The notes under the pieces: model-generated
The model's input: the letters and a program-made list of their open reading frames with translations, nothing else
Databases searched by the model: none
Told to the model about the DNA's origin: nothing
Shown: in pieces, positions 3,955 to 19,741 of the stretch
How the letters are laid out: each line of letters starts with the position of its first letter
Position numbering within the stretch: the stretch's first letter is position 1
Position numbers and translations under genes: made by a program
Source of the DNA: Hyphochytrium catenoides
Lineage: Eukaryota > Protista > Hyphochytriomycota
Length of the DNA: 41,284 nucleotides
Direction of reading: 5' to 3'
NCBI GenBank assembly: GCA_900088475.1
Contig: FLMG01002024.1
Coordinates: 1 to 41,284 of the forward strand

Positions 3955-5739
3955 TCAATGGCGGTGGCACTGCTTTCCTTCACTATCATCCTCCTCAGAG
4001 AACTCATAGTAACTCCACTCTTCAAATGGATCCTCCCATTCCTCAAAGTCTTCTCCTCTATAGTGCACCATCTCGTCCTCCCTAAGGAGACAGCTATCTA
4101 ATCCCGACCTAATCTTTGCGATATCTCCATCGTCAGCCGAAAATTTGCCGATGAAAACTAGTTCCTGCCGCTTGTCTCCGTCTTCTCTGGCCATTAGCTC
4201 TTCGTAGTTTGGTAGCTCTTTCATGCTGCGAGTTCGACGCTCTTCTGGAAAGTCAATCATCCACATTCCTCCGTTTGATAGCGTGCAGTACAGCCCGGCC
4301 TGCGACCACATGCCATAGTTCTTGGGCCGGGTAGCCAGCCAGAAGACGCCTTTGCTGCGGAGAAGGTTCTTGAAAATACCTTTTCTCTTTTCGACAAGTC
4401 TTCTTCGGACTACATCCTGGTCCAGAGGATCTTCTCCGTCGCTATCCTCCGCCTCGTCCTCTGCCATTGGGTCATCAATCTCTTCCTCGCCATTTTCCTC
4501 AGCCCTCTCGTCGGCCTCTTCCTGCTCCTCATCCATGTGCTCCTCGTCCATGGGTGGCGGTGGTAAGTCTGGTGCTTCAATAATGACAAGCTCCTTCTGA
4601 AGAAGGTTCATTAGCCTCTGGGGATGAAAGGGTTTCCTTGCAGAATAGATGAAGGCACCAACGCCATACTCTTCTGTCTCTGGCACAACGCGTGAAAGAG
4701 ACAGAGACTCCAGCCAACCATTGTGGGACGCAGCGCGTTCAAAGCTGAACTTCTTGGTGCCTAGGATATTCTTAGGGTCGATTCTACCCTGAACGCTCTT
4801 TACCAGGGTTGCATAAGGATTGAACCGCTTAATCACTCTCTCTACCCTCTCTACCTCTTGTGGAGAAACGAGATCCGTTTTGTTCAGGACGATAACGTCC
4901 GCGAACTCTATCTGGTCGCAGAGAAGATCTGTCAGAGTCCGCGTATCGTCCTTCGGAAGCTCGTCCTTGTGTGCGTCTAGTTGACAAAGAAGTCGAGTAT
5001 CCTCAAAAACGGAGGAAAAGTTGGCAGCGTCTACCACAGTGACGCAAGTGTCCAGGATGGCGATATCTTTGAGCTGCGGCATTGCTCTAACGTGTTCTTT
5101 CACCGAAGAAGAAGAAGAAGAAGGATCCTGTTCTCCCGTCATTCCTATTTCCGTGGACTTTGGTGGAGTCTGGCTTCGGGAGCGCTTGGATGGCCGCCCA
5201 GCTACCTGTCCGTCCGTTGTTTCCTCTTCTTCCTCTTCCTCCTCTTCCATCATCTCTCTCTCAGGCTCAGGAGAAGAGCCGGAAGGATGGCCCTTCTTCT
5301 CAAGGCCGCTTGAAGGTAGCTCAAAGGCGAAGGTCTCTGCTACCTGCATTGGCTCACTGATCCCTGAGCTCTCTATGATGATATAGTCCACCTCCCCATT
5401 CCTTGCGATGTTTGCGACCTCCTCTAGTAAATCAAGGCGCAACGTACAGCAGATGCACCCGTTCTCCAGTCTCACTAGCTGCTCCTTTCTCTGTAGGATG
5501 CCGCTTTTGGCCACTAAGTCTGCGTCAACATTGACCTCCCCCATGTCATTGACAATGACAGCGACTCGGAGACCGTGCTCTTTGTTCTTGAGAACGTGCT
5601 GGAGAAGGGTAGTCTTTCCACTGCCTAGAAATCCTGATAGCAGGGTGACGGGAAGGCGTGGCTGCCCTCTTGAAGTCTGGGACGAAGAAGAGTCAGCAAC
5701 AGCTGTTACTTCTGTGGCTTCTGGGGGTAAGGGAGCCAT
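3955..5739 (-). CDS. COG0523 (CobW/G3E family) metal-chaperone GTPase, YciC/ZigA-like, intronless (~594 aa)
   Basis: Walker A GFLGSGKTT, VIVNDMGEVNVD, metal motif GCICC, IIESSG, VTVVDA and NKTD. The CobW_C domain has PETEEYG, PFHPQRL, LLRSKGVFW, WSQAG, QELVFIG and a terminal DPFEEW. The first ATG is at 5739; the ORF track extends to a TTG at 5778. Confidence 0.95.
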   Translation of the reverse strand: MAPLPPEATEVTAVADSSSSQTSRGQPRLPVTLLSGFLGSGKTTLLQHVLKNKEHGLRVAVIVNDMGEVNVDADLVAKSGILQRKEQLVRLENGCICCTLRLDLLEEVANIARNGEVDYIIIESSGISEPMQVAETFAFELPSSGLEKKGHPSGSSPEPEREMMEEEEEEEEETTDGQVAGRPSKRSRSQTPPKSTEIGMTGEQDPSSSSSSVKEHVRAMPQLKDIAILDTCVTVVDAANFSSVFEDTRLLCQLDAHKDELPKDDTRTLTDLLCDQIEFADVIVLNKTDLVSPQEVERVERVIKRFNPYATLVKSVQGRIDPKNILGTKKFSFERAASHNGWLESLSLSRVVPETEEYGVGAFIYSARKPFHPQRLMNLLQKELVIIEAPDLPPPPMDEEHMDEEQEEADERAEENGEEEIDDPMAEDEAEDSDGEDPLDQDVVRRRLVEKRKGIFKNLLRSKGVFWLATRPKNYGMWSQAGLYCTLSNGGMWMIDFPEERRTRSMKELPNYEELMAREDGDKRQELVFIGKFSADDGDIAKIRSGLDSCLLREDEMVHYRGEDFEEWEDPFEEWSYYEFSEEDDSEGKQCHRH

Positions 5740-6030
5740 TGTTTGAGCGCTATCCCACAAGCCCTGCTTGTTGCTCAATGTTACGCTCTGTGTGGAACGA
5801 CGTGTGTTCTAGGGCGACTCAGAGACTAATCTTTAGAGTAAAGGGCAGTGACGATAGAGTGCTGGTGTCAGTAAGAGCTCTGATTGATTGATAAAGGGTG
5901 TTAAGTGATAAGCTAAATTTCCCAGAGAGAGGAATGTTCGGGGAGTGAGTGAAGCGCTGAGTGGAGGCGGCTTGCGAATGCTCACCATCCTTCACGGTAG
6001 CTCTCTTTACATCCTCTGGTGGGGAAAAAT

Positions 6031-6044
6031 TGATAGCGCTATCA
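6031..6044. promoter_or_regulatory. Perfect 14-bp palindrome TGATAGCGCTATCA, candidate transcription-factor site in the divergent COG0523/ZIP promoter
   Basis: The palindrome is directly visible. It lies between the COG0523 start (5739) and the putative ZIP 5'-UTR intron donor (6350). Regulatory function is inferred only. Confidence 0.4.
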
Positions 6045-6500
6045 GCCAAGCTCTCAACCACTGGCTGTCACGTAGTCATGCGCTGAAATGGAAGACAGAT
6101 GCCTTGTCTAGCTTCACTTTGGCGGAAGGCTTGCTAGTCCTGCCACCACCTTCAAGTCTTTCGTCAGAGCTCTCGGTCTCTCTGAAGCCAGCTCCGGTTC
6201 TTAATATCTTTCCTGTTGCCTCATCGCTTTACCTCCCACGTCTGAATGACTGATACTTCCCACTCTGAAGTACCAGGTGCCTATCCGACGGGCATCTTAT
6301 CCGTATGACGGGTCGTCCCGGCCATCGTCTTGGGGGCACGGAAAGGAAGGTAAGAGGTTCAGAAAAGGTCCTCTGATGAGTGCACCATGCTTCTCGGGGT
6401 GTACGCTTCTGTCTCTCTCTCTCTGCACTCTTCTGCTGGCTCTGCCCTTGATGTGAGTCTTCTGGTCGCCACAAGAAGTTCTTGGTGCGACACCCCTCTA

Positions 6501-6628
6501 TTCTCCCTTTTCTCTCTCTCTCTCTTTGTCTCTCTCTGTCTCTCTCTCTCTCCTCCCTCTCCTCTCTCTCTGTCTCTCTCTCTGTCACTCACTCTCTCTC
6601 TCTCCCTTTCTCTCTCTCACTCTCTCTG

Positions 6629-6660
<32 letters not shown>

Positions 6661-6670
6661 TCTCCCCCCT
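6501..6670. repeat. Imperfect (CT)n microsatellite / polypyrimidine tract
   Basis: Long ctctct run with ctgt interruptions, probably inside a ZIP 5'-UTR intron. Confidence 0.95.
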
Positions 6671-7529
6671 GGTCAAGCCCTTAAGAACCACTCTGCAGAA
6701 TCTGTCAACATCAATCCGAAGGCGCTTGCTGCCCTAGGTATTACTACTGCCACTACTCTACTGCCACCACCCCTCTGATGGTATGCCTATTATTATGACT
6801 AGTACCATCGGATAGCAGGTGTCCGAAGGGTTGTGAGGGCTTCTGATTCGTGGCTACCTTCCTTCCTGGTCTCTCTTCCCACTCTCGTGACTCCCAGTCT
6901 CTCTCTCCTTGTCCCGGGCCCTCTTCTTCTTGGTTACGCTCTCTCCTTTCTCGTGCTTGACTCCTCTTGCCTTCCTACAATTTCTTCTCTCTTTTACTCC
7001 CTTGAGGTCTCCTCCTAGAACCAAGGAATTATTGATCGCCTCTCTCTCTCTCTTTGCTGCAACCCCTGACAAGGATATGCCCCTCTGCTATTATCTCTGT
7101 CGTCCTACATTCTTACCGTCGACCATCGGTTTCCTTCTGCTATTATATAAGCCCAGCATGCACTGAGATTGCCAAGACCTTCCACTCCTTCACTTAGATG
7201 CCCTGTTTGATAAGCAAGACAGCTCCAGTTCTTGCCCATACTTCCTAGTAGGCGCTGGTCTTCCCATGACCTGTACTTGCGGTGACAGCACTCTGGAGAA
7301 GAGGAGCATCATTGGAGGACGCTTAGAGCGAGGGAAGAAGAGAGACAAGAGACAAAGGGAGAGAGGGAGAGGGAGAGAGAACCACGGGGAGGGAGAAGAC
7401 GCTTAGTCTGGGTACTCATGTCTGAGGAGCCACAATCCGTCTTTCCCAAATCCATCAAGATAATCTCAAGGATATTAGACACCTTTTCCCTAGCAGACTT
7501 GATAAGCGTGTGATCATCGTCTTCGCATC

Positions 7530-9061
7530 ATGGAGCCGTCTCCAGCACCGGCCTCTCTTTCGTCCAGCGCTGGTTCTGCTCATGACTGCGGAGGCCCAAC
7601 AGGGAGAGGAAACGACTATGATCTTCCCCTACATATAGCTTCTGTCTTCATTGTTTTTTTCATCTCTCTCTTTGGTTCTCTCTTGCCAGTCCTCGGGAAG
7701 AAGAGTCCCACCTCATGCCTGAGCCTAAATAAAAGACTCATCAACAGCTTAACGGGCTTTGGAATAGGCGTTGTCATCGCTACTGGCTTCGTCCACATGG
7801 TGCAGCCTGCCATGGAACAGTTGAACGATCCCTGTCTGGGCCTAGCGGAGTCCTATCCTGCCTTCCCTATGGTCATTATCGTCTTCACAATCCTCCTCCT
7901 GCAAGCCATGGAGACGGAGTTTGTCCGGCATGTGATGCACAAGGAGGACATGTCCATGTCTCCATCTTCTTCGCACAATCACGAGGCCATGCGGGCTATT
8001 CGCCTTACAGAGAGGACGCCTTTGACTGAAGGAGGGCGGCAAAAAATAGCAACCGCAGAGGGTTATGATGTGCCCGTACGGGCACCCTCTTACCATGGAA
8101 AGTTGGAGAATGACGAAATGGAGAAGCCAAGAATGGAAACGTTAGAGATCGGCCCGGTTCATGTCCACCTGCACCATGCGCACGAGCAGGTAGTGGTTGC
8201 CACTGGGAAGGCCAGGGAGAAAATAAGGTAATTGTAAAGGGGCAGGATGCTCTGTCTCTTGGTGGGTGGACATAGTGCTCAATTCTCCCATCCCATCGAC
8301 TTCTTTCCTGTCTTCTACTTTTCTCAAAGATTTGGAGCATTGTTCTCTCCTATCGCCGAGCCCAAGGTAGCGCCATCTCTCTCTTTCAGTCTATTGCTGT
8401 GAGATCTACCCGACGCTATGCGCGCCACATCATCCCTTTTCCAACTGACACAATTCCTGGCCTCTTTTCACCTATCGCTCAGGGTCAAGGTCACAACAAT
8501 GTTCTTTGAAGTCGGGTAAGTTTAACCTCTTGCCACGGAGCTCCAGGTGCTTGGTATTATTCTCTTCTAACAAGATCTTGCCCTCCTCTGTCAATCATCT
8601 GCTCTTCTGATAGGGTCTACATGCACTCAGTGCTTATTGGTGTGGGTCTCGGAGTGCTGTCTTCCCCGTCACAGTTTACTAGTCTGTTGATAGCCCTCTG
8701 CTTCCATCAGTTCTTCGAGGGAATTGCCGTTGGCTCCATGGGTGCTGAGGCCTTCTCTTCCCTCCGTTCAATGGTTGCAGTGTCTGCGCTTTATGCTGCC
8801 ACCACCCCCGCAGGCATCATCATAGGGATTCTATTCTCCTCTGTCTATTCTAAGACCTCTCCCTCCGCGCTACTGCTGGAGGGCGTACTAGACTCTGTGT
8901 CGGCTGGTATCCTTATTTATGCTGGCGTCGTGGAGCTTCTTACCTACAAGATGACGAGAAATAGCGAGTTCATCGAAAAGTCAGGCTGGGAGAGGGGCCT
9001 GGGGTACGTGTGTGTGTGGACGGGAGCAGCAGGAATGGCAGTCATCGGCAAATGGGCCTAA
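7530..9061 (+). CDS. ZIP-family (Zrt/Irt-like) zinc/iron permease (~392 aa, 3 coding exons)
   Basis: Exons 7530-8227, 8483-8515 and 8614-9061 (1179 nt, GT-AG). Motifs: DYDLPLHIASVF, FGIGVVIATGFVHM, His-rich loop HVHLHHAH, TM4 HSVLIG, TM5 CFHQFFEG, TTPAGIIIG, SAGILIY, and C-terminal MAVIGKWA. Confidence 0.95.
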
Positions 9062-10325: not shown

Positions 10326-12359
10326 ATGACGCTTACCTGCACTGCCTGCAATCTGACCTTTGAGACTAGTGGCGAGCAGAGAGCTCACTATAAAGCCGAG
10401 TGGCACAGGTAGGACGAACTTTGATACACTGAGAAAATGGTCGCTCACAACTCCATCATATATTAATCGTCTGTCGTCTCTGGATGGTCCTTAGGTATAA
10501 CTTGAAGAGAAAGGTGGCGGGGCTTGGGGGTGTTTCTGAGGCAGACTATGAGAGAAGAAAAGAAGCAGCTCTGATACGCACAAAAACCGCCGAGCCGGTA
10601 GAGTTCAGTGGAAGATGTCACAACTGCAAGAAGAACTTTTTGAGCCAGAAGGCCTTCGACCAACACCGCCAGTCTAAGAAGCATCGTTTGGAGGTTAACA
10701 AACATGGCAATGGCTTAGAGCGCTTGGAAGTGAATGGTGTGATGATAGGGGAAGAGGAAGTTGTTGCGGACCGAAAGGATGAGGCCAGCGCTGTCAAGAA
10801 GAGCACCTCGATGGTTTCTCATCTGGAGAGACAGCGAATGACAGAAACTAATTTTGCACCTCATGCACCCGCTGAGGATAGTGAGAAAATGGACGAAGGG
10901 GAAGAGGAAGTTGCAGAAGGGGAGGAGAATCTTCAAAATAAGGACCTCACAGTGGACGATGTCAGCATTCTGGATTGCATCTTCTGCAATGTGAAAGGCA
11001 GCGACCTGGAGAGGTGAGAGCCTACGACATCTAACATTGGCTACACACACCAGAGAGCATTGGTTCCCTACACTTCTTCTTGGTACCTGATCTACGCCCA
11101 TTGTCCTTGAGCAAGACGATCGGTGTTTGATTACGTAACCCTCTTCTTGCAGATCGCCTCTTCCCCTGTCTTCTTCAGGTCCTTATGTTCTGCTTTTACC
11201 TCTTCAAAGTGACTGTGTTTCTAACGCCTCTTTCCCTCATTCTCCGTTTCCTTATTAGTATGGTGGCTCACATGCAAAAGGAGCACGGATTTTTCATCCC
11301 CGACATTGAGTACTTGGTGGACATCGAAGGGCTCCTGAAGTACCTATCATGCAAGGTGAAGATTGGACGCATTTGCCTTTACTGCAACGGCAAGGGGAAG
11401 AGCTTCAAGGCCTACGGAGACTGTCAGAAGCACATGCTTACCAAGTTTCACTGCAAACTCCGCTACGAGGAAGACAATGACTTGGAAGAATATGCTGAAT
11501 ATTATGACTTCTCTTCATCTTATGAGGGGCTAGAAGAAGAAGGAGATGATGCTGAAAGGAATCCTGCAGACGTGATGGAGGAAGAAGATGATGATGACTG
11601 GGAGACTGACGAGGAAGATGGAGAAGGTGAAGAAGATGATGATGCGGAGAACAAGCCCCTTGTCAGGAGGTAAGCTCTTCGAACTAGCGTCTTTCCCTTA
11701 TTAGAAGAAAACAATAGCAGTGTAATTGAATAAGCACCGCAGTGAAAGAGATAGAAAGAGGAAGGAAGGGAATGAGAGAGAAAATGAGAGAGCCAAACGT
11801 TGAGTCGGAACGTTTGGAAGAGATTTCTGAGAAGGATAGAAGCATTGCTCGCGATTTACTCTTCCGTACCTGCACAGGACGATTCGGATAGCTGATAATG
11901 GCGAGCTTGTCTTGCTGGACGGACGACGAGCAGGACTAAGAGAATTCCAGAGATATTATAGGCAGCATCTGAGGCCGAACGATGAGAGGGAGCAGGTGCT
12001 TGCGAACTCAAGAGAAAGGCTCCTCCTCATGTATAAGGATGCAGGCGTGAGCACCAAGACCGAGCTGGCAGTGACTTACCATAGCTCAATTGTGGTGAGC
12101 CATTTACATCGATTACAGACCTCTTTCTCTGTCTTTGTGGATGTTCTACAAAGGTTTCGCTAATCTCTGCTGCATCCCTAGTGTTCCTTGCATATGCCAT
12201 TGCCTTCCCACTCATCTTCTTTCCCTTCTGACCTTCGTGGTTCTTTGTGCCTTTCAGCGTCAAATCAAGGCCAGATTAAAGACCAAGAATCCCCACGAGC
12301 GAGCCCAGAGCAAACTCGAACGGCGGGCCCATAAGCTGCAAACTATGAGCTTTAGATGA
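10326..12359 (+). CDS. REI1: C2H2 zinc-finger 60S maturation factor REI1/REH1/ZNF622 (~435 aa, 5 exons)
   Basis: Exons 10326-10408, 10495-11013, 11259-11669, 11878-12070 and 12258-12359 (1308 nt). Motifs: MTLTCTAC...QRAHYKAEWHRYNLKRKVAGL, CHNC...HRQSKKH, CIFC...HMQKEHGFFIPDIEYLVD, CLYC...HMLTKFHCKL and GLREFQRYYRQ. The 3' end is less certain. Confidence 0.92.
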
Positions 12360-16193: not shown

Positions 16194-19100
16194 ATGGAGG
16201 AGTTTCAGCAGCTGTCACTCCCTGATGAGGAGCTGAGGGACCTCACGGAGCAAGCCATCTCCTGGGCACTCTCTCATGGGCTGTTGATGACCAAGCAGCC
16301 CGGAGAGGCGCATCATGTCCCGTTCTCTCTTCTTCCCATTCGGGTGAGACTTTGTTTTTCCTGGCCTTAGTTCTTCGTAGAGCTCCTCCCCCCAATCTCT
16401 CTCTGTCCTTCCTTCTCTCTCTCTTCCCAACCTCCCCCATCCTCTCTCTTTGTCTCCGCCTCTCTCCCTTTTTCTCTTGTTCCTCTTCTTCTTCCCTTGC
16501 TAGCTTAGCTTGAACTATCTGCCTAGCCTCCGCCAGTCACCAAGAGCTTTTTCTTCGCTGTGACACTCCCTTCTTCCCTAACACTTTTCTGGGCTGGTTG
16601 CTCTCTGTTTTATTGTCTTAGTACCCCGCCTCGGAGTTTCAGAAGGCGACAGAGCTTTCTCGACTCTTTTGCAAGATGACAGATGCAATTAGCCGAGATC
16701 CAGAGTGGCTCTGCAGGACCCTGGAGCCGTAGGTCCATCTTTTGAATGTCTTCATATCTCTTTGCCACTCCTCCTGCTCTCTGGTTTGTATCCATTCTTC
16801 TCTCTCACATCCTCTCTCTGTGTTGTCTCTTCTTCTGACCGCCTGAAGCTGTCTCCTACTCTCTCGACAGAGTCCTCGAAAAGGACGACTTCACAGCTAG
16901 GCTGGTCGACATCTATCGCAAGGTCACCGCAGAAGGACCAGTACAGGTAAATATAGGGCCATGCCCTAGTGCTACACGCTCAGAGATAGCGGAGAGAGAA
17001 AGACACACACAAAGTGACAGAGCGATGGGCAAAGCCACCTAAGAGGACTGCGTGGGACTGAGTTGGCAAAGGAGAAGAAGAAGCAGCTGAGATTCAGAGG
17101 CTATACATCACGGCTTACAAGCACTACTTCTCTCGCGCCTTCTCCTTCTCTCACTGTTACTGCTCAGAGCTGTTCTCTGGGGATCTTGCGGTCGGACTAC
17201 ATGCTGCATGAGGTGGATGGAGAGGCTCCTCGACTATTGCAAGTAGAGCTGAATACTATCTCCTGTGCCTTTGCGGGCCTCAGTACGTTGACGTCCCAAC
17301 TGCATAAGTAAGCGGCTCATTCTCTACATTCCTGCCTATACCTGCAGGTCTACCCCTAACTATTTCGTGCCCAGAAGGTTCTACTCTACTCGATAAGCGA
17401 AGTGGCCTAGGGATAGCGGAGTTGTATCTCGTATCTCTCAGCCCCTAGTGTTGAGTCATGTCCTCTCTCCCTAATCTCGCCACTTTGGGCTTACAGCCCG
17501 GGCTTTCTGTTGGGGGTGACTTACATTTTGTCTGGCACCTGTGCCGCTTAGGTACATGGTGGAGCGTCTAGGACCGCAATATCCGTCCATATTGCGCTTT
17601 CTGGGCCTTGAGAGTGTGAATCCAGAAAAGAACCAGCGCATGCCGGAGAATAGAGCGGTGATGGAGCTGGCCAAGGCTATAGCAGGAGCTCATGAGTACT
17701 ATGGCAAAGACAAGTAAGGACCTTGGCTTTTCTCCCAGTCACGCACCTCCGCCTAGGTCCAATGAAGTTTAACTGTCCCTGGCAGTTGACCCATCCTTTC
17801 CTTCTTTGTACCTCTTCTGCGTTGAAAGAGCATGGGTGCTTAGTCGCTTCCGTATTGCTCTTCCACATTGTCTCAGCGATTCCTTTTTTTTCGGCTTCTC
17901 AAATTGTCTGGATCTTCTGCCTCTACTCGTAGGGCCTTTGTTCTCTTTGTGGTTCAAGAAGGAGAAAAGAATAACATCGACCAGCGATTGTTGGAATATG
18001 CGCTCTGGGAAGGTCATAGAGTGAAGGTTATCAGACGATCGTTAGGGCAGGTACATAGTCTGGGATGTATCTATGTCCAACTCCTCCTTCGTCTACTTTC
18101 TCTCCCGTCCATCCCTCTCCCTCCATCTCTAGCCCCTGCTCTTCCCCTTCGTTTCTATCTCCAACTCTCATGTTTTCACCCGTGTCCCCGTCTCTTTCAA
18201 ACGCATTAGTTATTGTCACTTTTACCAAGTTTTGGAATTTCAGATTGCCGCTCAAGGCCGGTTGGAAGGGGAAGGGAGAGTGTTGATGCTGGGAGACCTT
18301 GAAATATCTGTGGGATACTTCAGAGCCGGGTAGGTAAGGGAGCGGGCGGAAGAAGAGACTTGAAGGAGAGAGACATCATGGTAGCAGCAAGGAAAAGTGG
18401 TAGAGAGAGAGAGAAAGAGAGAAGAGAGACAGACAGACAGAAATGGAAGGATATTTTCAGGAGGTTAGAGTAGTCATTTGGGGAAGGCAGAGAGAGCGAC
18501 GATTGCATCGAGAGAAGTTCCACGGCTCTGATGGCCCCCGCCCTTCTCTTCCTTGGCCTAGGTATACTCCCAGAGACTTTCCAAGTGAGAGAGAATGGGA
18601 CGCCTTGCTTCTTCTGGAACGGTCTGCAGCTATTCTCTGTCCTTCTCTTGGTTATCATCTAGCAGGAGCCAAGAAGGTGCAGCAGAAAGTGGCTGGGAAG
18701 GGACAGGTCGAGCGCTTTCTACCGAAAGACGAGAGCGAAAAGGTTCGGGAGAGCTTTGCAGGGCTTTGGGGACTGGAGAAGAACTCGCCCGAGACGGAGA
18801 GGTACAGCGTAATGGGTTCATGCTTTAGGGCTCTCCTAAGCTTTGATCTAGACTTTCCTTTTGGGTTCCTCGTGGCTCCTTCTTGTCTCTGTGTGAATGA
18901 CTAATCCTTTCTCCTCGCGCAGAGCTGTCTCCCAGGCCCTAGAGACTCCTGAACTCTTTGTCATGAAGCCTCAAAGAGAGGGCGGCGGGAACAATTACTA
19001 TGGACAAGATGTTAAGCAGGCGTTAGAGAGAATGTCAGGAGAGGAGAAAGCTGCGTACATCCTCATGGCCAGAATATGTCCCAAGACGCAGTCAGCTGTA

Positions 19101-19741
19101 CGTTTTCACTGCTCTTCTTCTGCCTTTCTGTCACACTCTTGGTATGATATACTATCTGTTTCTCGTCTGCTCTCTCTCTCTNNNNNNNNNNNNNNNNNNN
19201 NNNCTCTCTCTCTCGTTCCCTCGCCTCTCTTGCTGCCAGTCTGCTGCTTCCCTTTCTGCACCCATCGAAGTAAGGTCTTAGGGCTCTCCTATGAATGTCT
19301 TCTACGCCTAGTTGCCCGGTCGAAACTTGCTCAATTCGTTCTTGTATGTGCTGGCCCTTTCTTTCGATTGACTCCGTTATACTTCTTTCGTTCTTACATA
19401 TGCACCTCGTGTCCCGTCGGGAGTTCTTCCCTCAGCTCTACATTTCCTCTCCTACCGTCTATAAAGAAGCTCTCTGACTGAGCTCCATCCGTTCTCCGCA
19501 GATCCTAGTCCGGAATGGTCAAAGTCAATGTGGTCCAACCCTCAGCGAGCTTGGGATGTTTGCTGTTTGCCTGTTCGACGAGGAGAAGATAGATACAGCC
19601 GATGAGAGGGTGAATCCGCGGAAAGGAAGAGAGATCTTCAGCAGACACGCAGGACACTTACTCCGAACAAAGCTGGACGGCACAAATGAGGGCGGCGTGG
19701 CTTCAGGTTACGCTGTGTTGGCCAGCCCACTGCTCTGTTAG
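16194..19741 (+). CDS. GSS: Eukaryotic glutathione synthetase, multi-exon
   Basis: Spliced segments MEEFQQ...WALSHGLL...[99 protein letters not shown] and [15 protein letters not shown] are the ATP-grasp GSH synthetase signatures. Confidence 0.95.
19182..19203. other. Assembly gap (N run) inside an intronic CT repeat
   Basis: 22 N bases flanked by ctct. Confidence 0.99.

What the first reader, a model, noticed from the sequence alone, without database searches (positions are those of the whole stretch)
3955..9061. Head-to-head COG0523 metallochaperone + ZIP importer: candidate eukaryotic zinc-starvation module
Seen: a YciC/ZigA-type COG0523 GTPase and a Zrt/Irt-type ZIP are divergently oriented. 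Established: YciC/ZigA proteins are Zur-regulated in bacteria, COG0523 and ZIP genes are co-induced by Zn limitation in algae, and fungi use a divergent ZIP + zincophore pair (Zrt1/Pra1, ZrfC/Aspf2). Inference: an analogous import-plus-allocation cassette under one promoter, in a lineage where I know of no characterised zinc regulator.
Basis: partly seen in the sequence, partly recalled or inferred. Interest (0 to 1): 0.8.

Follow-up and report, generated by a model that had tools for sequence, protein, structure and literature searches.

The report
Zinc carrier and chaperone gene pair
A water-mould relative has a zinc-importer gene and a zinc-chaperone gene back to back, and the DNA between them carries a short signal that water moulds also place in front of their own unlinked copies of such genes, which points to a shared, still unidentified metal switch.

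Summary
A single-exon ZigA-like COG0523 GTPase (minus strand, 3955-5739) and a three-exon Zrt1-like ZIP (plus strand, 7530-9061) are divergent, 1,790 bp apart. The genome is sister to oomycetes, probably Hyphochytrium.

The linkage is not conserved. None of 9 eukaryotic COG0523 loci and none of 4 oomycete ZIP loci has the partner gene nearby. No RNA run holds the locus, so co-expression could not be tested.

I did find a conserved promoter motif. TATCCGACGG / TTGCCGACGGCGG (core CCGACGG) is the most enriched word upstream of oomycete ZIP, ZigA-like and ZNG1-like genes. It occurs in 17 of 19 such promoters against 6 of 32 control promoters, and two hold-out loci fetched afterwards confirmed it. 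The window's only two TATCCGAYGG copies in 41 kb both lie in this intergenic region, at 6282 and 6805.

The pair therefore probably belongs to one conserved regulon, presumably zinc-responsive, rather than to a conserved cassette. The scan noted two more ZIP head-to-head pairs elsewhere in this genome; I could not check them. The motif's function and the metal signal are inferred, not shown.

The parts
3955..5739 (-). ZigA-like COG0523 (nucleotide-dependent metallochaperone) gene. Single exon, 594 aa. Two acidic inserts, one inside the G domain and one between the G domain and the C-terminal domain.
   Evidence: Pfam cobW and CobW_C. NCBIfam ZigA at 420 bits is the best model. It aligns over its full length with oomycete orthologues at 56-60% identity. 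In the ML tree it is sister to all oomycete members at 100/100 support, in a clade separate from ZNG1/CBWD-like proteins.
5740..7529 (.). Shared 1,790-bp intergenic region between the two start codons.
   Evidence: No Pfam-bearing ORF and no Rfam family. No Zap1 ZRE, ZafA ZR core, plant ZDRE or Loz1 LRE.
6282..6291 (+). Site A: TATCCGACGG, an exact copy of the oomycete consensus core. It lies 543 bp from the COG0523 ATG and 1,239 bp from the ZIP ATG.
   Evidence: It holds the only TCCGACGG in the 41-kb window. Its 11-mer TATCCGACGGG is identical to a site 128 bp upstream of an Aphanomyces euteiches ZIP. The second allele differs at flanking positions but not within the motif.
6805..6814 (-). 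Site B: TATCCGATGG, inverted relative to site A. It lies 716 bp from the ZIP ATG and 1,066 bp from the COG0523 ATG.
   Evidence: It is the second of only two TATCCGAYGG matches in the window, where shuffles expect 0.06. The same variant CTATCCGATGG occurs upstream of ZIP genes in two Aphanomyces species.
6713..6722 (+). Weak motif-like site AATCCGAAGG (2 mismatches).
   Evidence: Four of the six TCCGA[ACT]GG matches in the window fall in the intergenic region. The status of this weak copy is uncertain.
6820..6829 (+). Weak motif-like site TGTCCGAAGG (2 mismatches), next to site B.
   Evidence: Status uncertain.
6400..6680 (.). (TC)n-rich low-complexity tract lying between sites A and B.
   Evidence: Logan contigs break here.
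7310..7400 (.). (GA)n-rich tract 130-220 bp upstream of the ZIP ATG, flanked by a direct repeat GA(G/A)GACGCTTAG.
7530..8227 (+). ZIP exon 1: N-terminus, TM1-3 and a His-rich cytosolic loop with HVHLHHAH (10 His in 105 residues).
   Evidence: Pfam Zip, profile positions 3-131. Loop composition.
8483..8515 (+). ZIP exon 2, 33 nt, encoding the start of TM4.
   Evidence: GT-AG borders. The frame joins exons 1 and 3 into a continuous ZIP alignment.
8614..9061 (+). ZIP exon 3: TM4-8, with the metal-site motifs HSVLIG and HQFFEG.
   Evidence: Pfam Zip, profile positions 187-322. TIGR00820 at 141 bits. 53-54% identity to Aphanomyces ZIPs.
6031..6044 (.). Palindrome TGATAGCGCTATCA. It was flagged separately by the scan and is not supported here as an element.
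   Evidence: The window holds six real 14-bp perfect palindromes, so one in this spacer is unremarkable. The outer base 6044 is polymorphic between alleles. It does not recur in oomycete target promoters.

Best explanation
Two intact genes of metal-homeostasis families lie head to head. One is a plasma-membrane-type ZIP importer of the Zrt1/Irt subfamily. The other is a ZigA-like COG0523 GTPase, which would bind metal at its CxCC motif and hand it to client proteins when supply is short. They are most likely controlled by the same, still unidentified, sequence-specific regulator. That regulator would act through a conserved element: TATCCGAYGG here and in Saprolegniales, TTGCCGACGGCGG in Peronosporales, with the shared core CCGACGG (CCG-N-CGG). 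Oomycetes place 1-8 copies of this element within about 500 bp upstream of unlinked ZIP, ZigA-like and ZNG1-like genes. This organism has one copy nearer each gene in the shared spacer. The physical pairing is a lineage-specific rearrangement of two members of one regulon, not an inherited cassette. The signal is most probably zinc limitation, because these three families are the classic zinc-deficiency set in bacteria, fungi, algae and plants. What is shown: the gene models, the family assignments, the non-conserved linkage, and the motif's enrichment and its presence in the spacer. What is inferred: that the motif is functional, that it acts on both genes, and that the signal is zinc.
For: Motif discovery without reference to the window: CCGACGG is in 10 of 14 target promoters against 0 of 32 controls (Fisher 2.5e-7). 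TATCCGA is in 9 of 14 against 0 of 32, and TCCGACGG in 9 of 14 against 0 of 32. These are the top-ranked 7-mers and 8-mers.

Density: TCCGACGG occurs 12 times in 10.2 kb of target upstream sequence and 3 times in the other 113 kb of the same loci, a 44-fold difference.

Per promoter: 17 of 19 targets have at least one site, 49 sites in all, and 15 of 19 have two or more. Among controls, 6 of 32 have one site and none has two (Fisher 8e-7 and 1e-9).

Hold-out loci fetched after the motif was defined: the P. infestans ZNG1-like gene has sites at -120, -219, -247, -327 and -356 (P 1.7e-6). The Plasmopara ZigA-like gene has sites at -130 and -154 (P 0.016).

Negative controls: Coccidioides, Chytridium and an unknown 43%-identity homologue have no sites. 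High-GC bacterial ZigA loci show no enrichment.

Window: TATCCGAYGG matches twice, where shuffles expect 0.06, and both matches are in the spacer. The Poisson probability of two in 1.79 kb is 2.3e-5.

Family knowledge: Chlamydomonas COG0523 genes are induced by zinc deficiency (PMC2770081). A. fumigatus mchC, named a COG0523 homologue in PMC9785309, is induced more than 1000-fold by ZafA (PMC6070888). zrfC-aspf2 share a ZafA-bound divergent promoter.
Against: There are no expression data. No RNA run holds the locus, so co-induction and transcription start sites are unknown.

I first met the motif by intersecting window k-mers with oomycete promoters. The strictly window-independent test on the two top 7-mers gives only P = 0.017 for the spacer. 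A 16-position PWM built mostly from Peronosporales sites puts the window site first but tied with two others.

The sites lie 543-716 bp from the nearer ATG, further than the usual 60-420 bp in oomycetes. In A. fumigatus, ZafA sites more than 1.2 kb from a start codon do not confer regulation, so each site may serve only the nearer gene.

The Aphanomyces ZIP promoters are paralogous, so their counts are not fully independent. The non-redundant counts remain significant.

Linkage is absent in all relatives I could check. ZIP subfamily I also contains Fe and Mn transporters, so the metal is not established.
Confidence: 0.55

Rival explanations
1. The two genes are chance neighbours. Each is regulated on its own, and the two motif copies in the spacer are coincidental or act on one gene only.
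For: Linkage is absent in 9 COG0523 loci and 4 ZIP loci of relatives. The 1.79-kb spacer is about what I expect for an average intergenic distance in a genome with about 18,500 genes averaging 3.64 introns (PMC5795050; my estimate). The COG0523-proximal 350 bp differs between alleles at about 10 positions. The window-independent 7-mer test is only P = 0.017.
Against: The exact consensus 10-mer and an Aphanomyces-type variant are the only two such matches in 41 kb, and both fall in this spacer. The scan noted two further ZIP head-to-head pairs with metal-related partners in the same genome, which I did not verify. Adjacency of these two families by chance is expected in well under 1% of genomes.
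Confidence: 0.2
2. The motif is real and shared, but it answers to another signal, such as iron, manganese, general metal or oxidative stress, or a life-cycle stage. The pair would then be co-regulated, but not as a zinc-starvation unit.
For: ZIP subfamily I includes Fe/Mn transporters such as IRT1 (family knowledge). No zinc experiments on oomycetes turned up in the paper library. The regulator is unknown. The Aphanomyces ZIP arrays could serve several metals.
Against: The motif is shared by three families whose common denominator in bacteria, yeast, algae and plants is zinc limitation: ZIP, ZNG1-like and ZigA-like. ZNG1 is a zinc-specific chaperone of MetAP1 (PMC10642216).
Confidence: 0.15
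3. It is an inherited import-plus-allocation cassette under one compact bidirectional promoter, analogous to ZRT1/PRA1.
For: The orientation is divergent and no gene lies between. Both motif copies sit in the shared spacer.
Against: There is no conserved synteny in any oomycete or fungus examined, whereas PRA1-ZRT1 is syntenic in 61 of 87 fungi that have both genes. The spacer is 1.79 kb against 884 bp for aspf2-zrfC. Oomycetes achieve the same motif sharing on unlinked genes.
Confidence: 0.08

Closest known systems
Aspergillus fumigatus zrfC-aspf2 and Candida albicans ZRT1-PRA1 divergent pairs
   Same: A ZIP importer lies head to head with a second zinc-homeostasis gene. Repeated copies of one short regulator-binding motif sit in the shared spacer, and the fungal pairs are co-induced by zinc limitation (PMC6070888; PMC5751234).
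   Different: The partner here is a cytosolic COG0523 GTPase, not a secreted zincophore. The spacer is twice as long. The linkage is not conserved in relatives, whereas 70% of fungi with both genes keep theirs. The motif (CCGACGG core) is unrelated to the ZafA CAAGGT or Zap1 ACCTTNAAGGT elements, both absent here. Regulation is untested.
Bacterial ZigA (NCBIfam NF038288), a Zur-regulated zinc metallochaperone GTPase
   Same: It is by far the best-scoring model: 420 bits here, and 430-442 for the oomycete and Coccidioides orthologues. The protein has a G3E GTPase domain, a CxCC motif and a CobW_C domain.
   Different: The score is below the curated cut-off of 600. The protein is eukaryotic, carries two acidic inserts and is 594 aa rather than about 400. 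No Zur exists in this lineage and no client protein is known.
ZNG1 / CBWD, the eukaryotic zinc chaperone of MetAP1
   Same: It belongs to the same COG0523 superfamily and has the same motifs. The oomycete ZNG1-like genes carry the same upstream motif.
   Different: It is a different clade, split at 100/100 support. Outside the G domain the window protein and the oomycete ZNG1-like protein do not align meaningfully. Oomycetes keep a separate ZNG1-like gene of about 396-460 aa.
Zap1, ZafA, Loz1 and bZIP19/23 zinc regulons of fungi and plants
   Same: The logic is the same: one regulator, one short element, and targets that include ZIP importers and COG0523 chaperones.
   Different: The element has a different sequence. 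The regulator in stramenopiles is unknown. I found nothing on it in four oomycete promoter-motif papers or in full-text searches.

Membership tests
COG0523 / nucleotide-dependent metallochaperones (NMC) | G3E P-loop GTPase domain (Pfam PF02492) with Walker A, Walker B/ESSG and NKxD | tested here: met
   PF02492 at 177.6 bits. GSGKTT, ESSG and NKTD are seen in the translation and the alignment.
COG0523 / nucleotide-dependent metallochaperones (NMC) | CxCC metal-binding motif between switch I and Walker B (definition in PMC10642216) | tested here: met
   GCICCT is invariant in the alignment with 14 homologues.
COG0523 / nucleotide-dependent metallochaperones (NMC) | CobW C-terminal domain (PF07683) | tested here: met
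   55.6 bits against a cut-off of 22.
ZigA equivalog (NCBIfam NF038288) | Whole-protein score at or above the curated cut-off of 600 bits | tested here: not met
   420 bits in three stretches interrupted by inserts. ZigA is still the top model by a wide margin, so I call the protein 'ZigA-like' and not a member of the equivalog.
ZNG1 / CBWD | Membership of the ZNG1 orthologue clade | tested here: not met
   The ML tree separates the two clades at 100/100 and the window protein falls in the other clade. The oomycete ZNG1-like proteins match proteins named CBWD2 at 54-58% identity.
ZNG1 / CBWD | N-terminal extension that binds the MetAP1 zinc finger | not testable with these tools
   Interaction assays would be needed. 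The N-terminal 28 residues are not conserved even among the oomycete orthologues.
ZIP (Zrt/Irt-like) transporters, subfamily I | Pfam PF02535 across the protein | tested here: met
   Exon 1 scores 60 bits and exon 3 scores 101 bits against a cut-off of 35.1, and they cover profile positions 3-131 and 187-322. The spliced protein aligns over residues 29-392 to full-length ZIPs.
ZIP (Zrt/Irt-like) transporters, subfamily I | TIGR00820 score above the cut-off of 231 bits | tested here: inconclusive
   Only the separate exons could be submitted by reference. They score 62 and 141 bits. The spliced protein was not scanned.
ZIP (Zrt/Irt-like) transporters, subfamily I | Metal-site residues in TM4 (H-S) and TM5 (H..E), and a His-rich TM3-TM4 loop | tested here: met
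   HSVLIG, HQFFEG and HVHLHHAH are in the translation. The assignment of these motifs to the metal site rests on family knowledge.
Fungal-type divergent zinc module (ZRT1/PRA1, zrfC/aspf2) | Divergent orientation with a shared spacer that holds the regulator's binding sites | tested here: inconclusive
   The orientation is confirmed. Two copies of a candidate element are present, but its function and regulator are unknown.
Fungal-type divergent zinc module (ZRT1/PRA1, zrfC/aspf2) | Synteny conserved across many species | tested here: not met
   0 of 9 COG0523 loci and 0 of 4 ZIP loci have the partner gene. A tblastn check of all fetched loci also found none.
Fungal-type divergent zinc module (ZRT1/PRA1, zrfC/aspf2) | Co-induction of both genes by zinc limitation | not testable with these tools
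   No RNA run holds the locus. Only DNA contigs could be laid on it.

The most novel reading that the evidence does not exclude
TATCCGAYGG / TTGCCGACGGCGG (core CCG-N-CGG) is the zinc-responsive element of the Pseudofungi (oomycetes plus hyphochytrids). A still unidentified regulator binds it and controls a regulon that includes ZIP importers, ZNG1 and the ZigA-like chaperone. In this genome two regulon members have been brought head to head and work as one bidirectionally regulated import-plus-allocation unit. This may be one of several ZIP-centred divergent pairs in the genome.
Probability: 0.4. Interest if true: 0.75.

Novelty: new variant of a known kind. Interest (0 to 1): 0.6.

Why it matters
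I found no described zinc-sensing regulator or zinc-responsive DNA element for stramenopiles. That group includes the oomycete pathogens of crops and fish, for which host zinc withholding is likely to matter. If the motif found here marks a zinc regulon, it gives a direct route to the regulator by DNA-affinity capture or one-hybrid screening. It also gives a way to predict the regulon in any oomycete genome. The head-to-head pair in this free-living relative would then be a compact natural reporter of that circuit. If expression tests fail, the pair is an ordinary lineage-specific adjacency of two well-known gene families.

Tried and rejected
1. RNA evidence. Laying their contigs on the locus gave allele differences but no transcripts.

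2. Known zinc elements. The Zap1 ZRE, the ZafA CAAGGT core, the plant ZDRE and the Loz1 LRE are absent from the spacer. GATA-like sites number 8 against 4.7 expected.

3. The 14-bp palindrome TGATAGCGCTATCA. The window holds six such palindromes, its outer base is polymorphic between alleles, and the 9-mer repeated at 5746 is at chance level once all pairs are counted.

4. Metagenome scan for closer relatives. All 80 loci appear to be bacterial. The 24 I first took for eukaryotic because of long match spans are high-GC contigs with two tandem COG0523 genes. They say nothing about eukaryotic synteny and I do not count them. None has a subfamily-I ZIP, and the motif is not enriched there.

5. 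PWM scan of the window. It was not discriminating, because the matrix is dominated by the Peronosporales 3' CGGCGG extension that the window's sites lack.

6. PDB sequence search. It returned only YjiA for the GTPase and nothing for ZIP exon 3.

7. Look-up of the scan's findings by sequence.

8. Hidden gene or ncRNA in the spacer. None was detected.

9. I could not tell whether A. fumigatus mchC, which is strongly ZafA-induced, is the ZigA-like paralogue.

10. The spliced ZIP protein has no reference, so I never submitted it whole to the remote tools. I used it only inside scripts.

Full report
WHAT IS THERE. The window is eukaryotic, with about 50% GC and many short exons. On the minus strand an uninterrupted ORF (3955-5778; the probable ATG is at 5739, giving 594 aa) encodes a COG0523 GTPase. 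It matches Pfam cobW (2.4e-52) and CobW_C (5e-15). The P-loop GSGKTT, the CxCC motif GCICCT, ESSG and NKTD are all intact. A 33-nt middle exon and two GT-AG introns of 255 and 98 nt complete it, at 7530-8227, 8483-8515 and 8614-9061. The 392-aa product aligns end to end with full-length ZIPs. It matches Pfam Zip and TIGR00820. It keeps the TM4 and TM5 metal-site motifs (HSVLIG, HQFFEG) and a His-rich loop with HVHLHHAH. The start codons are 1,790 bp apart. In between I found no Pfam-bearing ORF and no Rfam family, only a (TC)n tract at about 6400-6680 and a (GA)n tract at about 7310-7400.

WHICH FAMILIES, WHICH ORGANISM. The best relatives of the GTPase are oomycete 'CobW C-terminal domain' proteins from Pythium, Phytophthora, Plasmopara and Peronospora, at 56-60% identity over the full length. 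Fungal homologues are near 40%. The ZigA model of NCBIfam scores far above all others for the window protein (420 bits), its Pythium orthologue (430) and the Coccidioides homologue (442). All three stay below the 600-bit cut-off. Oomycetes also have a second, shorter COG0523 of about 396-460 aa. It matches proteins named CBWD2 at 54-58% identity and scores best on the YjiA-type model. A maximum-likelihood tree splits the two families at 100/100 support. It places the window protein as sister to all oomycete members of the long family (100/100; oomycetes without the window 95/88). The protein is therefore ZigA-like and not ZNG1. That branching fits a lineage sister to oomycetes. Several details point to Hyphochytrium catenoides: the scan's own notes, three genomic runs from one study, a proteome not deposited at NCBI, and 3.64 introns per gene. 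Run and organism names are coded, so this identification is an inference. ZIP exon 3 finds its closest relatives, at 53-54% identity, in Aphanomyces euteiches and A. cochlioides, the latter annotated 'high-affinity Zn(2+) transporter zrt1'.

IS THE LINKAGE CONSERVED? No. I examined the orthologous or homologous COG0523 locus in nine eukaryotic sources:
- Pythium oligandrum, Phytophthora sojae, two unnamed oomycete assemblies and an unknown 43%-identity homologue;
- Coccidioides and Chytridium;
- with shorter flanks, P. infestans and Plasmopara.

None has a ZIP gene nearby. From the ZIP side, Saprolegnia has an unrelated neighbour, and the two Aphanomyces species carry tandem arrays of 5-7 ZIP genes with no COG0523 within 10 kb. 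A tblastn of five ZIP proteins against every fetched locus agrees. By contrast, PRA1-ZRT1 is syntenic in 61 of 87 fungi that have both genes (PMC5751234). A metagenome scan meant to find closer relatives returned what appear to be only bacterial loci. The 24 that looked eukaryotic by match span are high-GC contigs with two tandem COG0523 genes, and I do not count them.

A CONSERVED PROMOTER MOTIF. Expression could not be read because no RNA run holds the locus. I therefore asked whether the spacer shares short words with the upstream regions of the oomycete ZIP and COG0523 genes already fetched. One family of words stood out. I then repeated the discovery without any reference to the window. 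Among all 7-mers and 8-mers in the 600 bp upstream of 14 non-redundant oomycete targets (six A. euteiches ZIPs, one Saprolegnia ZIP, five ZigA-like genes, two ZNG1-like genes), compared with 32 control promoters from the same loci, the top words were:
- CCGACGG: 10 of 14 against 0 of 32 (Fisher 2.5e-7);
- TATCCGA: 9 of 14 against 0 of 32;
- TCCGACGG: 9 of 14 against 0 of 32.

TCCGACGG occurs 12 times in 10.2 kb of target upstream sequence and 3 times in the remaining 113 kb of those loci, a 44-fold difference. Thirty-four instances give the consensus TTTATCCGACGGCGGC. There is a Saprolegniales flavour (TATCCGACGGG, TATCCGATGGG) and a Peronosporales flavour (TTGCCGACGGCGG, TTTCCGACGACGG). The core CCG-A-CGG is an inverted repeat. 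I then counted a loose pattern, CCGACG[GA] or TATCCGA. It is found in 17 of 19 oomycete target promoters, 49 sites in all, and 15 of 19 have two or more. Among controls, 6 of 32 have one site and none has two (Fisher 8e-7 and 1e-9).

Two loci fetched after the motif was defined served as hold-outs. The P. infestans ZNG1-like promoter has sites at -120 (TATCCGACGGCGG), -219, -247, -327 and -356; all three CCGACGG in its 7.4 kb lie there. The Plasmopara ZigA-like promoter has sites at -130 and -154. Fungal homologues and an unknown distant homologue have none. High-GC bacterial ZigA loci show no enrichment, with 16 observed against 13.2 expected.

THE MOTIF IN THE WINDOW. TATCCGAYGG matches the 41-kb window exactly twice: at 6282-6291 on the plus strand (TATCCGACGG) and at 6805-6814 on the minus strand (TATCCGATGG). 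Dinucleotide-preserving shuffles expect 0.06 matches, and none of 100 shuffles reaches two. Both matches lie in the COG0523-ZIP spacer, on either side of the (TC)n tract. Site A is 543 bp from the COG0523 ATG and site B is 716 bp from the ZIP ATG. Their 11-mers are identical to sites upstream of Aphanomyces ZIP genes. TCCGACGG occurs only once in the window, at site A, and four of the six TCCGA[ACT]GG matches fall in the spacer.

Three qualifications apply. My first encounter with the motif was window-guided. The strict test using only the two de novo 7-mers gives P = 0.017, while the Poisson figure for two TATCCGAYGG in 1.79 kb is 2.3e-5. A long PWM dominated by Peronosporales sites ranks site A first but tied with two others.

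OTHER FEATURES OF THE SPACER. The Zap1, ZafA, plant ZDRE and Loz1 elements are absent. The 14-bp palindrome at 6031-6044 is not special: the window holds six such palindromes and its outer base differs in the second allele. That second allele, seen in the genomic contigs, differs at about 10 positions in the 350 bp next to the COG0523 start. Within the coding region it differs at eight SNPs and one in-frame 6-bp deletion. Five of the SNPs and the deletion lie in the N-terminal tail or the acidic loop. The other two SNPs lie in the C-terminal region. None touches the G-domain motifs or site A.

MECHANISM. Family knowledge suggests the following. The ZIP imports Zn2+ (or another divalent metal) into the cytosol. 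The ZigA-like GTPase binds metal at its CxCC motif and delivers or buffers it for clients in a GTP-dependent way. The motif data suggest that both genes answer to one regulator that also controls ZNG1-like and other ZIP genes across oomycetes. Zinc limitation is the likeliest signal, because these families are the recurrent zinc-deficiency set:
- two Chlamydomonas COG0523 genes are induced by zinc deficiency (PMC2770081);
- diatom ZCRP-A becomes abundant under Zn/Co limitation (PMC9010474);
- ZNG1 and ZNG2 act in acclimation to poor zinc nutrition in Arabidopsis (PMC10642216);
- A. fumigatus mchC is induced more than 1000-fold by ZafA, and zrfC-aspf2 share a ZafA-bound divergent promoter (PMC6070888).

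The same A. fumigatus study found that sites more than 1.2 kb from a start codon do not confer regulation. Here each site may therefore serve mainly its nearer gene. 'One shared regulator' is better supported than 'one promoter'.

WHAT IS KNOWN. The motif strings are not in the text of four oomycete promoter or TF-specificity papers. Full-text searches for them return only primers. Searches for oomycete or stramenopile zinc regulation found nothing relevant. Figures and most supplements were not searchable, so prior description cannot be excluded.

VERDICT. The gene pair is real and correctly identified. It is not an inherited cassette. It probably unites two members of a conserved, presumably zinc-responsive, regulon whose candidate cis-element is reported here. 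My confidence in that reading is 0.55. I file it as a new variant of a known kind, a metal-regulated divergent pair and regulon with a different partner protein and a different element. Interest is 0.6, because it makes the unknown zinc regulator of oomycetes and their relatives directly testable. The scan also noted two other ZIP head-to-head pairs on other pieces of this genome, one with a secreted His-rich protein and one with a multicopper oxidase. I could not read those sequences.

Noticed in passing
L003:752-4278 (Logan SRR15309491 contig). Probably also the contigs that carry P0002+P0125 and P0005+P0126.: In Pythium/Globisporangium-like assemblies the ZNG1-like and ZigA-like COG0523 genes are tandem neighbours on the same strand, about 580 bp apart, and each has its own CCGACGG sites upstream. 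In P. oligandrum the two genes are on different contigs.
   Followed up: partly
L009:7546-21068, L012:4759-14270: Aphanomyces euteiches and A. cochlioides carry tandem arrays of 5-7 Zrt1-like ZIP genes. Most members have 1-4 motif copies 59-540 bp upstream. The first gene of one array and the last of the other have none.
   Followed up: partly
window 3955-5739, second allele seen in run X1: Seven of the eight allelic SNPs in the COG0523 coding region are non-synonymous, and there is an in-frame 6-bp deletion at 4446. Five of the SNPs and the deletion are in the N-terminal tail or the acidic loop. Two SNPs are in the C-terminal region. None is in the G-domain motifs.
   Followed up: partly
window 6297-6312: Just after site A there is a split look-alike, TTATCCGTATGACGGG. 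The other allele differs at two of its positions (6299 and 6310), so it is probably not constrained.
   Followed up: partly
window 7081-7146 and 7315-7406: Two short direct repeats lie near the ZIP 5' end: CCYTCTGCTATTAT twice, 52 bp apart, and GA(G/A)GACGCTTAG twice, 80 bp apart, flanking the (GA)n tract. The 11-mer TCTGCTATTAT and the 9-mer GACGCTTAG occur nowhere else in the window. Their meaning is unknown.
   Followed up: partly
window 6271-6291 and 6803-6822: Both motif copies are preceded by an E-box-like hexamer: CAGGTG-CC-TATCCGACGG and, on the other strand, CACCTG-C-TATCCGATGG. This may be chance. I did not test it against the oomycete sites.
   Followed up: no
window 10484-11673 (+): The downstream neighbour of the ZIP is a C2H2 zinc-finger gene with Pfam zf-C2H2_jaz and zf-C2H2_2 domains, spread over at least two exons.
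   Followed up: partly
window 18443-19481 (+) and 19182-19203: Glutathione synthetase exons (Pfam GSH_synthase, GSH_synth_ATP) are interrupted by a run of N, which is an assembly gap.
   Followed up: no
L058-L091 (metagenome contigs LFCJ, LKMJ, LFFM and others): Many high-GC bacterial contigs carry two ZigA-like COG0523 genes in tandem. At first sight the long match spans mimic intron-bearing eukaryotic genes.
   Followed up: partly
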